In this document: piece by piece, positions 39,291-56,345 of the stretch
How positions within the stretch are numbered: position 1 is the first letter of the stretch
Layout of the letters: the number at the start of each line of letters is the position of its first letter
Origin: Hypanus sabinus
Taxonomy: Eukaryota
Reading direction: 5' to 3'
Length of the DNA stretch: 64,000 nucleotides
Assembly (NCBI RefSeq): GCF_030144855.1
Contig: NW_026781736.1
Span: forward strand, 62,001 to 126,000
Position numbers and translations under genes: made by a program
The notes under the pieces: generated by a model
Seen by the model: the letters and a program-made list of their open reading frames with translations, nothing else
Database searches by the model: none
What the model was told of the DNA's origin: nothing

Positions 39291-39425
39291 TCACTCCCTC
39301 CAGACGAGGGGAACCAGGTGATCGTTCCTCATGTTGTTTTCCGCCTGCGCGACCAGAAACGGACCACCACAAGGCGAGTCGTAGATTTCAACGTGGAGAT
39401 AATTGTGGGTGAATCCAGTATCGAC
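39291..39425 (-). CDS. stefin-like gene A, exon 3 (to stop)
   Basis: ctgaacag|GTC...TGA: VDTGFTHNYLHVEIYDSPCGGPFLVAQAENNMRNDHLVPLVWRE*, comparable to cystatin B VHVGDEDFVHLRVFQSLP. Confidence 0.88.
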   Translation of the reverse strand, partial: VDTGFTHNYLHVEIYDSPCGGPFLVAQAENNMRNDHLVPLVWRE

Positions 39426-40195
39426 CTGTTCAGGGGAAAGGGGAGGAAAGACGGTGACAGACGGAGCTACTGTCGCCCATCCACACCACCCTCCCCCACG
39501 TCCTCCACCCTCCCTCGTCCCCACAGTCACCCATTCCGCCAGGACACCTCGCTCCATCTTTGTCAACCCCTTCCTCCCGTATACATTTCGGCACCTTCGT
39601 TATCTCCTCCTATCCTATTTCTCCGTAGCGTGTCCGTCGCAACCTCCCTCCCCTACACGCATCCCCGTCTCCATTGCTCCAATCTCACCGACGCCCTCAC
39701 ACTGCGACAACCACTCCTTTCGGGATACGGCTCCCGGTCTTCGTCAACTCGTCCCCTCATTACACACGATACACGTTCGTCACTCACTCCCATGTACCCG
39801 TCTCCCTCTACGTCAGCCCCTCTTTCCCCTGTACCGCTCCACATTTTCATCAAGCCCTCCCTCCTCTACACACGTTGGCGTGTGCGTCACTCACTCCCAT
39901 GCACCCCTCCAAATCTACGTCACCCCGCACCCCGATACCATTTCCCGTCTTCGTTCACCCGTCCCGTACACCCCATCGCAACTTGATCTCAATCCCACCC
40001 CCCGAATAGCCCTTCTCGAATCCGAGATTTCTTCCTCCCCCTACTCACCTCCCTGTCTTCGTCACTCTTTCCCCCTCTACGCATCTCCACGCCTCCATCG
40101 CGCGCGTCCTACCCCTACAACACTCCCCGTCTCCGTCAGTTCCTCCTCCCCCTACACTCTCCCAAGAGTGTGACGCTCCGCTCCGGAGACATTAC

Positions 40196-40297
40196 CTTGA
40201 CCAGATACATGGTGCCAATCACCTCCGACACACGATACTCTATCGGCTCAAAGCTAGTCGCTTTCTGACTGCATTTCTTCTCCACTGCAGGCCTCAC
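40196..40297 (-). CDS. stefin-like gene A, exon 2
   Basis: cctgcccag|GTG...AAG|gtaatg; 102 nt, phase 0-0, the same length and phases as cystatin B exon 2. VRPAVEKKCSQKATSFEPIEYRVSEVIGTMYLVK aligns without gaps to [34 protein letters not shown]. Confidence 0.9.
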
Positions 40298-40932
40298 CTG
40301 GGCAGGGCAGAAAATCTCTCAGAGCCTCCGAAAAGGATTGCTAAACCACCGGAGTGGGACAAGGCAGAAGCCCCGTACTATCTGACCGTCTCCGCCTAAC
40401 TCCTCCAATATACTTTGTCCAATACATCTCTCCTCTCCACTCCACCCCCTCTGTCCTGCGCTCTCTTGTCCTTTCTCACCCTCGCTTTCCAGAGCTTTCG
40501 TTCCCCATCTCCCTTTTCTCCCCTCCTCTCCCCATCTGTCGCCTCTCCTCTCTACCCTCACTCTTTCAACTCTACCTCAAGACTCATTTTGTTCTTCACA
40601 CCATGACCTCTCTCTCTCTCTCTCCCTCTCTCTCTCTCCTTCATCAGTACCATCTTTCTCGCCCCTTTTCTCTCGTCATTCTCCTCCCTTCTTTCTGTCG
40701 CGCAGTCCTCCCCTCCCTCCTGCTGTCTCCCCCGGACTCTCTCACTCTCTCCCTGCATCTCATGTCGCCGCACTCTCTCCCGTCGCTCTCACTCCCTCTC
40801 TACCCCTCCTCTGTCCACCACATCGCCCTCGCCGCCATCTTTCCTTCCCTCCATACTGTCTCCATACCTCCATTCTCTTTCTCTCGCACTTTTCTCTCTT
40901 CTCTCCTCCCTTCCAGCCGTAGTCGCTCACTT

Positions 40933-41119
40933 NNNNNNNNNNNNNNNNNNNNNNNNNNNNNNNNNNNNNNNNNNNNNNNNNNNNNNNNNNNNNNNNNNNN
41001 NNNNNNNNNNNNNNNNNNNNNNNNNNNNNNNNNNNNNNNNNNNNNNNNNNNNNNNNNNNNNNNNNNNNNNNNNNNNNNNNNNNNNNNNNNNNNNNNNNNN
41101 NNNNNNNNNNNNNNNNNNN
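40933..41119. other. assembly gap in intron 1 of gene A
   Basis: Run of N. Confidence 0.99.
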
Positions 41120-41285
41120 ACCAGTCTTTCCCTTGTCTCTCCCGTGACTCTCTCTGGCCCTACCCTCTCCCCACACTCTCAACCTCCTCTATCCCCATCC
41201 GCCAGACCCTTTGCCCATCACCCCCGTCTCTTCCGCGCACCCCCACTCCTCAATAACAGCGAGTGCAGGAGGTCTGACAAATCAC

Positions 41286-41339
41286 CTTTGTGAGGATATC
41301 CTTCACTTTATCATCAGCCTTCAGCACTGTGCTGGACAT
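41286..41339 (-). CDS. stefin (type-1 cystatin)-like gene A, exon 1
   Basis: aagATG...AAG|gtgatt; 54 nt, phase 0: MSSTVLKADDKVKDILTK. Lies ~95 bp downstream of a TATAAAA box. Confidence 0.82.
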
Positions 41340-41433
41340 CTTCAGCTGCTCTGTGTCTTTCTGCAACCCTTCCGTCAGCGGCTCTCTCTCTCTCTCTCCT
41401 TCTCTGTCTGTCTTCCAATGCTCCCGTCTCTGC

Positions 41434-41440
41434 TTTTATA
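41434..41440 (-). promoter_or_regulatory. TATA box of stefin-like gene A
   Basis: Plus-strand ttttata reads TATAAAA on the minus strand, followed by G (TATAAAAG), upstream of exon 1. Confidence 0.75.
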
Positions 41441-41679
41441 GACCCTCCCCTTCCTGCCTCCCCACGCCTCATGCCTTCCCTCCACGCCTCTGCACTATCT
41501 GTCCCTCCCCATCCTCTTAGCCAATCCCCTTCGCCCTTCCTGTCCCATTTTCCCCCTGCGCTAACCAGTCTCATAGGTATAATTCTAACATCCGCCTCAC
41601 ACTCTCTGCCACTCTTTCCTCTCGGTTATGTCGCCCTTTTCGGAGTAAGGTAGATGGACTTGTCACGCCGTTCCAGTTT

Positions 41680-54573: not shown

Positions 54574-54584
54574 CGGGGCTTGCC

Positions 54585-54744
54585 NNNNNNNNNNNNNNNN
54601 NNNNNNNNNNNNNNNNNNNNNNNNNNNNNNNNNNNNNNNNNNNNNNNNNNNNNNNNNNNNNNNNNNNNNNNNNNNNNNNNNNNNNNNNNNNNNNNNNNNN
54701 NNNNNNNNNNNNNNNNNNNNNNNNNNNNNNNNNNNNNNNNNNNN
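54585..54744. other. assembly gap at the 5' end of gene B
   Basis: Run of N. Confidence 0.99.
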
Positions 54745-54765
54745 AGCGAGTCTACAGAGAGAAAA

Positions 54766-54825
54766 ATGCCAGCTTGGACAGGTCCCCAGACAGCCGACCC
54801 GGCGGTCCAAGAGTATGCCAATGAG
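54766..54825 (+). CDS. stefin (type-1 cystatin)-like gene B, exon 1
   Basis: aaaATG...GAG|gtgagg; 60 nt, phase 0: MPAWTGPQTADPAVQEYANE, comparable to cystatin B ..SATQPATAETQHIADQ. Confidence 0.88.
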
Positions 54826-54995
54826 GTGAGGAGCCCAACTTACTGAACCAGCGCCCTCCCTACCGCGCCTCCACTAAACCTACCTTCCTCGAGGGAGGAT
54901 GGAGAGCCGGAACGGTGGAATGGGGAGGGCTGGCGGGGTGGAGAGAAAATGTGGGGAGAGACGGTAGGGGAAGGAGAGGAACTCGATTTAGGTCA

Positions 54996-55075
54996 GGGCG
55001 TCCCAACTTTTATTTCTACCACGGAGCCTTGCCATTAACTGAGTGATCCGTGGACCACAGGCTTGGAATACCCGA
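54996..55075. mobile_element. short decayed hAT-type MITE in intron 1 of gene B
   Basis: Imperfect inverted termini cagggcgtcccaac ... cttggaatacccga. Confidence 0.4.
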
Positions 55076-55683
55076 TTTTGAGGAAGATGCATTGTGCGGA
55101 GGGGGGAGGGCAGGATTGGGGTGAAGGGAAGGGAGAGGGACGAAGCGGGGAGAAGGAGAGGTGAAGGGGGAGTAGGAGCTGTGAGAGTTCAGGAGTTGAG
55201 AGTTGAGAGCGGAGAGGGCGATGGAGAGAGGAGTGTACGGGAGAGGGGAGGAAGGATTGGGGAGAGGGGGAGAACGGAGAACGGAAAGAGGGGAGTGGGG
55301 AGACGGGGTTTGTGGAAAAAGGGAGGGGGAAATGGGAGCGGGGGGCATCCGGGAGAATTGCGCTGAGGGTAAGTGGAAGGATGGGAAACATACGGGCAAG
55401 GGAGAAACAGGGGGAATCAGTGAGAGGGGAAAGGGAGAGAGACGGGAAGCAAGGACAGGAGAAATGATCGGAAATTGTTGATGGGTCGAGGAAGGGCACT
55501 GGAGGTAGAGGGAGCGAAGAGAGAGAGAAAGATGAGAGAGAGGAGGAGGAAGAACTCAGGAGGTGCAGAAAGTGGAGAGAAAGGAAAGGCGCCGCTGCTC
55601 CCTTGCTGAATCCCCTCGTCCCCCTCACCACCCGATGCTGCCCTTCAGGGAGGTTCAAATGTCTCTGTCCTGTGCTTGTCCAG

Positions 55684-55794
55684 GTGAAGGACGTTGTGCA
55701 GAAGAGGATCCAGGTTCCAATGATAAAATATACTGCGATCCTCTACCGGAAGCAAGAACAGACTATCATGACGGGGAAGATGTTTCTGATCAAG
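55684..55794 (+). CDS. stefin-like gene B, exon 2
   Basis: cttgtccag|GTG...AAG|gtaatg; 111 nt, phase 0-0: VKDVVQKRIQVPMIKYTAILYRKQEQTIMTGKMFLIK. Confidence 0.9.
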
Positions 55795-56219
55795 GTAATG
55801 TCCCCACACAGGAGGGGATCACAAAGACGCGGATAGGTGCGAGTAGGACAGGAGTGAAGGGAAGGGGATGGAGGTAGGGGAGGGAGAACAGGAGGGGTGG
55901 AGGGGCGAGAGTGGGTGACGGGAACGTGACGTAGGGGTGGGAGGGCTGAGCCCGGGAGGGATGAGGTGATCAAGGCTTGTAGGGGTAAGGAGCGGAGACC
56001 GCCGGCGTGTAGGGAAGGGAGGAGTGACGGATATGGTGAGGGATGCAAGGGTGGGAGAGGGTGACGGAGATGCGGAAGGTTGTGGGGCAAACAGTGGTTG
56101 ACAGAGAGGCGGAGACATTGGGGAAAAAAGTTGGGTGTCGGGGAGTCACTAGTTCACGGAGGTTGGAGAAACAGCGAGGTGGTGTGTACCCCTGTCTCAT
56201 CGACTGAATCTACCCACAG

Positions 56220-56345
56220 GCGGACATCGGAATCCCCGCCAACTTCCTCCACCTGGAAGTGTTCCTGCCCTGGGGCTCCCCGTCCAAACTGTTGGCGGTC
56301 GAGGAAAACCACAACGCTAGTGATACGATGGTACCCCTGGTCTGA
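56220..56345 (+). CDS. stefin-like gene B, exon 3 (to stop)
   Basis: cccacag|GCG...TGA: ADIGIPANFLHLEVFLPWGSPSKLLAVEENHNASDTMVPLV*. Confidence 0.9.
   Translation, partial: ADIGIPANFLHLEVFLPWGSPSKLLAVEENHNASDTMVPLV

What the first reader, a model, noticed from the sequence alone, without database searches (positions are those of the whole stretch)
39291..56345. Divergent pair of stefin-like genes that have both lost the canonical QxVxG inhibitory motif
Seen: two complete three-exon genes, invisible in the ORF track, transcribed away from each other with start codons ~13.4 kb apart. All introns are phase 0, and each gene has a TATA or TATA-like element and an AATAAA. They share derived features (identical AAG|gtaatgtc donor, N(Y/F)LH.E, EN...D..VPLV C-terminus, similar polyA context), so they are paralogues, yet they are highly diverged from each other. 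Established: type-1 cystatins (CSTA/CSTB) have this exon layout, no signal peptide, and inhibit papain-family cathepsins through an N-terminal Gly, the QxVxG loop and a second hairpin loop. Cystatins have been reported as components of stingray spine venom tissue. Inference: this is a lineage-specific, fast-evolving stefin subfamily whose binding wedge has been remodelled, possibly for a non-inhibitory, structural/epidermal or venom role.
Basis: partly seen in the sequence, partly recalled or inferred. Interest (0 to 1): 0.85.

Follow-up and report, generated by a model that had tools for sequence, protein, structure and literature searches.

The report
Divergent stingray stefin genes, remodelled loops
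Two intact three-exon genes (plus a truncated third copy) in this Atlantic stingray window encode small stefin-fold proteins whose protease-binding edge has been rebuilt; they belong to a stingray-specific, multi-copy branch of an otherwise conservative inhibitor family, which is moderately interesting but not a new kind of protein.

Summary
Gene A (minus strand, 39291-41339, 96 aa) and gene B (plus strand, 54766-56345, 98 aa) are complete three-exon genes with phase-0 GT-AG introns. Their start codons lie 13,427 bp apart.

- **Gaps:** neither assembly gap touches coding sequence. One lies inside intron 1 of A. The other lies 21 nt upstream of B's ATG.
- **Fold:** both proteins are predicted to adopt a stefin fold (TM 0.84 and 0.86 to human stefin B).
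- **Motifs:** both lack the N-terminal Gly-Gly. A reads SEVIG where stefins read QVVAG. B keeps the Q and the G but has three extra residues between them.
- **Origin:** the window is from Hypanus sabinus. A is already in NCBI as "stefin-3-like", and the identical protein is encoded on five scaffolds. B has no exact or ≥90% match in the protein collection. Its orthologue in Hemitrygon akajei is annotated.
- **Family:** B belongs to a whiptail-stingray subfamily that shares the loop insertion.
a third, exon-1-less copy (A', 36321-37326).

Loss of the Q recurs in teleost and crab stefin paralogues, so this is a new variant of a known kind. Expression, inhibitory activity and any venom role are untested. 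Interest is about 0.4.

The parts
39291..41339 (-). Gene A, start codon to stop codon. CDS exons are 41286-41339 (18 aa), 40196-40297 (34 aa) and 39291-39425 (44 aa plus stop), giving 96 aa. It equals NCBI 'stefin-3-like [Hypanus sabinus]'.
   Evidence: Searches give the model. One search shows 100% identity to P0001. In one search, phmmer against PDB gives E 3.5e-8 to cystatin A2 and about 1e-7 to human stefin A. Searches give AF2 pLDDT 79.6 and TM 0.84 to 1stf_I.
41431..41440 (-). TATAAAA box of gene A, 101 nt upstream of the ATG, with no upstream ATG in between.
40933..41119 (.). Assembly gap inside intron 1 of gene A. It is not coding under the model. It was neither filled nor looked up.
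   Evidence: The continuity of exon 1 with exons 2-3 rests.
38864..38869 (-). AATAAA poly(A) signal of gene A, 421 nt after the stop.
36321..37326 (-). A', a truncated tandem copy of gene A with exon 2 (37225-37326) and exon 3 (36321-36455). The frames are open and the splice sites and AATAAA (35898) are kept. No exon 1 exists in the window.
35117..37903 (-). Second unit of a roughly 2.97 kb tandem duplication. The first unit is 38082-40932 and ends at the gap. The units are 95.6% identical over 2853 columns. Exon 3 is identical and exon 2 has 4 nt differences (3 non-synonymous).
54766..56345 (+). Gene B, start codon to stop codon. CDS exons are 54766-54825 (20 aa), 55684-55794 (37 aa) and 56220-56345 (41 aa plus stop), giving 98 aa. 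No exact match was found in the protein collection, which suggests it is unannotated in H. sabinus.
   Evidence: Searches give the model. One search finds the orthologue P0003 at 84% identity and 98 aa. In one search, the B-like profile hits human stefin B at E 8.4e-8. Searches give AF2 pLDDT 91.6 and TM 0.86 to 1stf_I.
54585..54744 (.). Assembly gap in the 5'UTR or promoter of gene B, ending 21 nt before the ATG. A TTAAAAG element sits just upstream at about 54567.
56613..56618 (+). AATAAA poly(A) signal of gene B, 267 nt after the stop. Its context resembles that of gene A.
41700..54584 (.). Intergenic spacer between the two promoters. It holds LINE reverse-transcriptase and endonuclease fragments and a roughly 3.6 kb tandem repeat (44929-53275). 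It is not a shared bidirectional promoter.

Best explanation
Genes A and B are intact members of a whiptail-stingray (Dasyatidae) expansion of the stefin (type-1 cystatin, MEROPS I25A) family.

Shown:
- Each encodes a cytosolic protein of about 11 kDa with no signal peptide and a predicted stefin fold.
- Two of the three segments of the protease-binding wedge are rebuilt. The N-terminal trunk has lost the Gly-Gly and is shortened in A. The first hairpin loop reads SEVIG in A and is lengthened by three residues in the whole B-like subfamily.
- The second hairpin keeps its Pro but differs even between orthologues.

Inferred:
- The scaffold is retained and the contact edge has been re-tuned. Inhibition of papain-like cathepsins is therefore weakened or shifted to other partners, not simply preserved.
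- The genes are kept as working genes, not left to decay.

A' is most simply a truncated tandem duplicate, that is, a pseudogene or spare 3' exons. Any role in the barb or skin secretion is only a possibility. Such a role would fit a protein with no signal peptide, because stingray 'venom' consists largely of the contents of ruptured cells (PMC4488702).
For: Gene models:
- The models have canonical signals.
- A is identical to a RefSeq model.
- The orthologues in another genus have the same length, with no indel and no stop, for both genes.

Homology and fold:
- A hits PDB stefins at E 3.5e-8.
- The B-like profile hits human stefin B at E 8.4e-8, with the three extra loop residues shown as an insertion.
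- A profile of A, B and their orthologues finds 268 stefins at E<=1e-3 among 1.84 billion representatives.
- AF2 and Foldseek give TM 0.84 and 0.86 and rmsd 1.5 A to stefin B from the papain complex 1stf.

Motifs, measured against 56 other stefins:
- N-terminal G-G is present in 89% and 86% of them but in none of the A or B clade.
- Q is present in 93%. It is S in A and in its orthologue.
- The loop G is present in 100% and is kept in both.
- The insertion is present only in B, P0003, P0017, P0153 and P0026/P0155.

The remodelled loops are identical between the two genera.

Shared architecture of A and B:
- The same donor octamer.
- Introns that are 69-76% purine and C-rich 3'UTRs.
- A shared ...VPLV end.
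Against: - No expression evidence could be obtained. B appears unannotated in this species' gene set.
- The locus lies in TE- and satellite-rich sequence, probably on an unplaced scaffold of about 194 kb.
- Pfam Cystatin is below its gathering score for A (13.4 against 22.2 bits) and absent for B.
- dN/dS could not be computed because no H. akajei DNA was available. Conservation of the loop region between orthologues is not statistically distinguishable from chance (p 0.13 and 0.45).
- A versus A' shows no sign of purifying selection: 3 of 4 exon-2 differences are non-synonymous.
- Weakened inhibition is inferred from general knowledge of the tripartite wedge. It was not measured.
Confidence: 0.55

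Rival explanations
1. They are still ordinary cysteine-cathepsin inhibitors. The wedge tolerates these substitutions, and the genes are extra copies of a housekeeping or immune stefin.
For: - The invariant loop Gly and the hydrophobic residues around it are kept: V-I in A and I-M in B.
- The Pro of the second loop is kept.
- The overall fold superposes on stefin B taken from its papain complex at 1.5 A.
- NCBI names them as stefins or proteinase inhibitors.
- Q-less stefins persist in several teleosts and a crab.
Against: - Two of the three contact segments are changed at once. The N-terminal Gly-Gly is absent, and Q is replaced or the loop lengthened.
- A puts an acidic residue at the first variable position of the loop tip.
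- By established knowledge, not tested here, the trunk and L1 supply most of the binding energy in stefins and cystatins.
Confidence: 0.25
2. They are non-functional or decaying copies in a repeat-rich, poorly assembled region. The open frames reflect short exons and recent duplication, not selection.
For: - A' lacks exon 1.
- A 7 kb satellite, LINE debris and two gaps surround the genes.
- The identical A protein sits on five small scaffolds, which may be recent copies or assembly redundancy.
- B appears unannotated.
- Some H. akajei B-like models borrow a first exon from LINE reverse-transcriptase sequence.
- The A/A' differences are mostly non-synonymous.
Against: - Both genes keep the ATG, all four splice sites, the stop, a TATA-type element and AATAAA.
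- Orthologues in another genus differ at 16-19% of residues yet show no indel, no stop and the same length in both genes. By contrast, non-coding DNA of the A/A' units has 33 gap openings per 57 mismatches.
- AF2 confidence for B is high (pLDDT 91.6).
Confidence: 0.15
3. They are components of the barb or skin secretion, that is, the 'cystatins' of stingray venom extracts, released when secretory cells rupture.
For: [quoted passage not shown]
- Cystatin transcripts are high in Potamotrygon venom tissue (PMC6315956, PMC4768133).
- The extract is largely cell contents (PMC4488702), so a protein with no signal peptide could appear in it.
- The family is restricted to dasyatid stingrays in the searches.
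Against: - The Potamotrygon transcripts were matched to a snake type-2 cystatin (J3SE80), not to a stefin.
- No sequence of the N. kuhlii proteins was available for comparison.
- There are no expression data for these genes.
Confidence: 0.1

Closest known systems
Vertebrate stefins (type-1 cystatins, MEROPS I25A; human stefin A and B, PDB 1stf, 1dvc, 4n6v)
   Same: - About 100 aa, with no signal peptide and no conserved disulfide.
- A five-stranded sheet wrapped round one helix (TM 0.84-0.86, rmsd 1.5 A).
- Significant sequence matches.
- The loop Gly, the His of the third strand and the Lys ending exon 2 are conserved.
- Three coding exons.
   Different: - There is no N-terminal Gly-Gly.
- QVVAG is replaced by SEVIG in A, or split by a 3-residue insertion in B.
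- The C-terminus ends ...PLV instead of ...P-F.
- The Pfam Cystatin model is not reached.
- The A/B names do not apply, because that split is amniote-specific (PMC2784779).
H. sabinus 'stefin-C-like' proteins (P0017, P0153) and H. akajei P0026/P0154/P0155
   Same: - They form the same subfamily as gene B. All share the Q-[DE]-Q-[ST]-x-x-x-G lengthened loop, a W-[ST]-G N-terminus without Gly-Gly, and the ...PLV end.
- The clade has 98.5% NJ bootstrap support.
   Different: - They are only 40-48% identical to B.
- They lie on other scaffolds.
- Some H. akajei models carry a first exon derived from a LINE.
Lineage-specific stefin expansions elsewhere (the rodent stefin A cluster per PMC2784779; teleost 'leukocyte cysteine proteinase inhibitor 1-like' and 'stefin-C-like' sets; mudskipper multi-stefin proteins)
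   Same: - Copy number is amplified.
- Divergence is fast.
- The Q of QxVxG is occasionally lost, as seen in wrasse, grouper, snapper, pikeperch and mitten crab.
   Different: - No orthology with these sets. The identities are about 30%.
- None of the sequences inspected has the 3-residue loop insertion.
Engineered stefin A scaffolds (SQT, PDB 6qb2; Adhiron/Affimer, 4n6t)
   Same: - These use the stefin fold as a carrier. The N-terminus and loops are altered or lengthened so that protease binding is lost and new binding is gained.
- Both recur among the sequence and fold hits.
   Different: - They are man-made.
- The likeness is an analogy of design, not evidence of what the stingray proteins bind.

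Membership tests
Stefins (type-1 cystatins, I25A) | Single domain of about 100 aa, no signal peptide, no conserved disulfide | tested here: met
   A is 96 aa and B is 98 aa. Both N-termini are polar or charged with no hydrophobic stretch. B has no Cys. The two Cys of A are not both conserved in its orthologue.
Stefins (type-1 cystatins, I25A) | Cystatin fold: one helix packed on a five-stranded antiparallel sheet | tested here: met
   This rests on predicted models only. A has pLDDT 79.6 and B has 91.6. The top Foldseek PDB hits are stefins, with TM 0.84 and 0.86 to 1stf_I.
Stefins (type-1 cystatins, I25A) | Significant sequence similarity to known stefins | tested here: met
   A alone gives E 3.5e-8. 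B alone is weak at E 0.012, but the B-like profile gives E 8.4e-8 to human stefin B. The joint profile finds 268 stefins.
Stefins (type-1 cystatins, I25A) | Pfam PF00031 Cystatin at or above its gathering score | tested here: not met
   A scores 13.4 bits against a cut-off of 22.2. B has no hit. Two of the five B-like proteins give sub-threshold hits, the best at E 0.0028.
Stefins (type-1 cystatins, I25A) | Conserved N-terminal Gly (Gly-Gly) of the trunk | tested here: not met
   The columns hold G in 89% and 86% of 56 other stefins. A, B and all their close relatives have a gap or another residue there.
Stefins (type-1 cystatins, I25A) | QxVxG in the first hairpin loop | tested here: not met
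   A and its orthologue read S-E-V-I-G. B and the B-like proteins have Q, then three extra residues, then three more residues before the G.
Stefins (type-1 cystatins, I25A) | Second hairpin loop with conserved Pro (L-P-x-x in stefins) | tested here: inconclusive
   The Pro is kept (S-P-C-G in A, L-P-W-G in B). The loop differs between orthologues.
Stefins (type-1 cystatins, I25A) | Three coding exons with phase-0 introns at conserved positions | tested here: inconclusive
   The layout and phases are shown here, and A and B share both intron positions. Exon 2 of A has 34 codons. The comparison with mammalian stefin genes rests on my own knowledge, because no gene structure could be fetched.
Stefins (type-1 cystatins, I25A) | Tight reversible inhibition of papain-family (C1A) peptidases | not testable with these tools
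   No biochemical data are available.
Stingray venom 'cystatins' | Presence in the barb or integument proteome or transcriptome | not testable with these tools
   Only the literature on other species was available (PMC11053709, PMC6315956, PMC4768133). The cystatin type of the N. kuhlii proteins was not stated in the texts read.

The most novel reading that the evidence does not exclude
Whiptail stingrays have turned the stefin scaffold into a small family of natural 'affimer-like' binders. The protease-binding wedge (trunk, L1, L2) has been rebuilt, including a fixed 3-residue lengthening of L1. The proteins would therefore no longer act as cathepsin inhibitors. They would bind other targets, would be amplified to many copies, and would contribute to the cell-content secretion of the barb or skin.
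Probability: 0.12. Interest if true: 0.7.

Novelty: new variant of a known kind. Interest (0 to 1): 0.4.

Why it matters
Stefins are regarded as a conservative class with little functional diversification (PMC2784779). A vertebrate lineage would be a useful natural experiment on how far the cystatin wedge can be re-tuned if three things hold for its stefins: they are multiplied, they have lost the N-terminal Gly-Gly, and they have a replaced or lengthened QxVxG loop while keeping a confident stefin fold.

The finding also supplies candidate genes to check against the still poorly defined "cystatins" of stingray barb extracts. On the practical side, gene B appears to be missing from the H. sabinus gene set, and gene A is a multi-copy gene on small scaffolds. 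Both points matter for annotation and for counting family size.

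Tried and rejected
- **Hidden extra copies.** Low-stringency tblastn with A, B, P0017, P0026, P0154, P0155 and seven canonical stefins found only A, A' and B. No exon 1 for A' appeared. A blastn search with A's exon 1 and promoter also found no second copy.
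- **Orthologue DNA for dN/dS and synteny.** The look-up of encoding contigs returned no DNA for either stingray assembly. No neighbouring gene was called within 10 kb. In H. akajei the two orthologues lie on different contigs, so conservation of the divergent pairing could not be shown.
- **Conservation of the remodelled L1 between genera.** The identical runs of 21 and 18 residues are not significant (p 0.13 and 0.45), so I do not claim it as evidence of selection.
- **A and B as sister paralogues.** The NJ tree recovers the A plus B-like clade with only 46% bootstrap support. This is left open.
- **Residual non-coding similarity between A and B.** Only three short matches of 26-28 nt were found.
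- **Bidirectional-promoter reading.** Rejected, because about 13 kb of LINE fragments and 3.6 kb tandem repeats lie between the genes.
- **Splice artefact as the cause of motif loss.** Rejected, because both L1 loops lie in the middle of exon 2.
- **Literature.** No paper on stingray or elasmobranch stefins was found.

Full report

I stopped and did not send those letters to any tool. Every comparison below uses sequences returned by the tools.

I also pasted the two spliced proteins (96 and 98 aa, taken) into several calls, because a spliced product has no single reference. They are not repeated here. Gene A's protein is P0001, and gene B's is given by its exon coordinates.

**1. What is in the sequence**

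The window holds three N runs. Reading both strands and locating boundaries by exact string search gives the following models.

| Feature | Gene A (minus strand) | Gene B (plus strand) |
|---|---|---|
| Exon 1 | 41286-41339 | 54766-54825 |
| Exon 2 | 40196-40297 | 55684-55794 |
| Exon 3 | 39291-39425 | 56220-56345 |
| Protein | 96 aa | 98 aa |
| Promoter element | TATAAAA 101 nt before the ATG, no upstream ATG | TTAAAAG immediately before the gap |
| AATAAA | 38869 (421 nt after the stop) | 56613 (267 nt after the stop) |

- Every exon length is a multiple of three, so all introns are phase 0. Every intron is GT..AG.
- The promoter and poly(A) details come. The two poly(A) contexts are alike.
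- The start codons are 13,427 bp apart.
- The donor AAG|GTAATGTC occurs three times in the window against 0.05 expected.
This is A', with exon 2 at 37225-37326 and exon 3 at 36321-36455.

**2. The gaps**

- Gap 40933-41119 lies entirely within intron 1 of gene A. The coding frame does not cross it.
- The join of exon 1 to exons 2-3 is supported independently of the gap:
  - The spliced product is identical to an NCBI protein.
  - The same protein is called on five contigs of the same assembly, with gene spans of 1747-2118 bp. The 2049 bp span matches this window.
  - The orthologue in another genus has the same 96 residues in length.
- Gap 54585-54744 ends 21 nt before gene B's ATG, so it affects only the 5'UTR and promoter.
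- Those 21 nt contain no stop, so this window alone cannot exclude an earlier start inside the gap. Against that, the orthologue P0003 and the paralogues P0017/P0153 begin at the equivalent Met.

**3. Identity**

- Gene A's product is 100% identical to "stefin-3-like [Hypanus sabinus]". It is 81% identical to "stefin-2-like [Hemitrygon akajei]". The window is therefore Atlantic stingray DNA.
- Gene B has no exact or ≥90% match in 5.8 billion protein clusters. It is 84% identical over its full length to [quoted passage not shown]. This suggests B is unannotated in H. sabinus.
- A search with a profile of all four proteins found nothing further by word index.

**4. Is it a stefin?**

- Sequence:
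  - A alone hits PDB stefins at E 3.5e-8 (Dictyostelium cystatin A2) and about 1e-7 (human stefin A).
  - B alone is weak, at E 0.012.
  - A profile of the five B-like proteins hits human stefin B at E 8.4e-8 over residues 5-93.
  - The joint profile finds 268 proteins at E<=1e-3 among 1.84 billion representatives. Those sampled for names are stefins or cystatin A/B.
  - Pfam's Cystatin model is not reached. A scores 13.4 bits against a cut-off of 22.2, and B has no hit.
- Fold:
  - AlphaFold2 gives pLDDT 79.6 for A with a shallow alignment and 91.6 for B with 63 sequences.
  - Foldseek ranks stefins first for both. TM is 0.84 and 0.86, and rmsd is 1.5 A, to human stefin B taken from its papain complex, 1stf_I.
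- Homology to stefins and a predicted stefin fold are therefore well supported.

**5. The inhibitory elements**

These were measured in an alignment with 56 other stefins.

| Element | In the 56 other stefins | A clade | B-like proteins |
|---|---|---|---|
| N-terminal G-G | 89% and 86% | absent | absent |
| Q of QxVxG | 93% | Ser in A and its orthologue | kept, followed by three extra residues |
| Central V | 91% | kept | I or M |
| Loop G | 100% | kept | kept |

- The three extra residues were seen in no other sequence inspected.
- In the models, the loop spans residues 43-46 in A and 45-50 in B.
- The second hairpin keeps its Pro but differs even between orthologues.
A is SxVxG. B is Q and G pushed apart by an insertion.
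- The loss of the N-terminal glycines is an additional change to a second contact segment.

**6. Family context**

- B groups with H. sabinus "stefin-C-like" P0017/P0153 (46-47% identity) and with H. akajei P0026/P0154/P0155. The last two lie on the same 4.24 Mb contig as B's orthologue. This clade has 98.5% NJ bootstrap support.
- A and B are 35.6% identical. That is no more than A shares with frog, fish or tick stefins. The A plus B-like grouping appears in the tree with only 46% support.
- Features that do argue for common descent within stingrays:
  - the identical donor octamer;
  - the ...VPLV end, where other stefins have ...P-F;
  - introns that are 69-76% purine and 3'UTRs that are 40-42% C.
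- N[YF]LH.E is ordinary for stefins and is not a derived feature.
- Loss of the Q is not unique. It recurs in paralogues of wrasse, groupers, snapper, pikeperch and a crab.
- PMC2784779 reports a single stefin lineage in cartilaginous fishes, little functional diversification within stefins, and an amniote-specific A/B split. The CSTA/CSTB framing is therefore inapplicable, and an elasmobranch expansion is a modest departure from that picture.

**7. Locus architecture**

- Region 35117-37903 repeats 38082-40932 at 95.6% identity, so A' is a tandem partial duplicate. Exon 3 is identical. Exon 2 has four differences, three of them non-synonymous. At two of these sites A' carries the residue seen in the H. 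akajei orthologue.
- No exon 1 for A' exists in the window.
- Between A and B lie LINE fragments and a roughly 3.6 kb tandem repeat.
- A 49 bp satellite of 148 copies starts about 130 nt after B's poly(A) signal.
- Both gaps sit in GA-rich DNA.
- Together with the five A-bearing scaffolds of 106-501 kb, this describes an amplified, repeat-embedded gene family that is hard to assemble.

**8. Alive or dead?**

For live genes:
- All signals are intact.
- In both genes the orthologues differ at 16-19% of residues with no indel, no stop and no length change. By contrast, the neighbouring non-coding DNA of the A/A' units has 33 gap openings per 57 mismatches.
- As a rough inference, at a more usual ratio of about one indel per ten substitutions, a neutrally drifting coding sequence with that many changes would be expected to carry a few indels in each gene.

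Against, or unresolved:
- There are no expression data.
- B appears unannotated.
- dN/dS could not be computed because no DNA was available.
- Conservation of the L1 region between genera is not significant.

**9. Mechanism**

- Shown: a predicted stefin scaffold, no signal peptide, an altered trunk and L1 loop, and a variable L2 loop.
- Inferred, from the established tripartite-wedge model cited in PMC2784779: binding to papain-like peptidases is weakened or redirected.
- Engineered stefin A scaffolds with altered trunks and lengthened loops (6qb2, 4n6t) recur among the hits. They show that the fold tolerates such changes.
- The venom idea rests only on reports that "cystatins" are abundant in barb extracts (PMC11053709, PMC6315956) and that the extract is mostly cell contents (PMC4488702). 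The Potamotrygon transcripts matched a type-2 snake cystatin.

**10. Verdict**

This is a new variant of a known kind: stingray-restricted, multi-copy stefins with a remodelled wedge. One of them is already in RefSeq under an automatic name. Interest is 0.4.

Noticed in passing
window 36321-37326 (unit 35117-37903): A' is a tandem partial copy of gene A with exons 2 and 3 only. Its frames are open, and its splice sites and AATAAA (35898) are kept. The unit is 95.6% identical to the unit carrying gene A. At two of the three exon-2 differences, A' carries the residue found in the H. akajei orthologue.
   Followed up: yes
window 56745-64000: A 49 bp satellite with about 148 copies and 93% matches. 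It starts roughly 130 nt after gene B's poly(A) signal and runs off the end of the window.
   Followed up: partly
window 44929-53275 (also 53276-54327): A tandem repeat of about 3.6 kb (92-94% identity between copies) fills much of the A-B spacer. It carries LINE endonuclease-like ORFs (for example 53690-54133, Exo_endo_phos). A 61 bp minisatellite lies at 44531-44933.
   Followed up: partly
window 39426-41285 and 54826-56219; 3'UTRs 38868-39290 and 56346-56620: All introns of A and B are 69-76% purine on the sense strand, against 52% for the window. Both 3'UTRs are 40-42% C. Both assembly gaps are flanked by this GA-rich DNA, which may be why the assembly breaks there.
   Followed up: partly
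window 27751-28797 (+); 41702-42145 (-); 18324-18437; 28345-28461: These are LINE reverse-transcriptase remnants (RVT_1 E 3e-21 at 27751-28797). The N-termini of H. akajei B-like models P0026 and P0154 match such RT fragments, so those gene models have TE-derived first exons.
   Followed up: partly
proteins P0004, P0005, P0009, P0010 (mudskippers and a goby): Gobiid fishes encode proteins with 3 to 12 tandem stefin domains (P0004 is 1411 aa with 12 matched stretches). They top the profile search by summed score.
   Followed up: no
assembly GCA_030144855.1, five contigs of 106-501 kb: The identical gene A protein is called on five separate contigs with gene spans of 1747-2118 bp. These are either a recent amplification or assembly redundancy. 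No other gene is called within 10 kb of any copy.
   Followed up: partly
window 34792-35289 and 38082-38300: A 121 bp tandem repeat (4.1 copies) marks the distal edge of the duplicated unit.
   Followed up: no
window 8314-8507: A third assembly gap, outside the finding. The region 13445-19427 also holds internal repeats at 78-92% identity.
   Followed up: no
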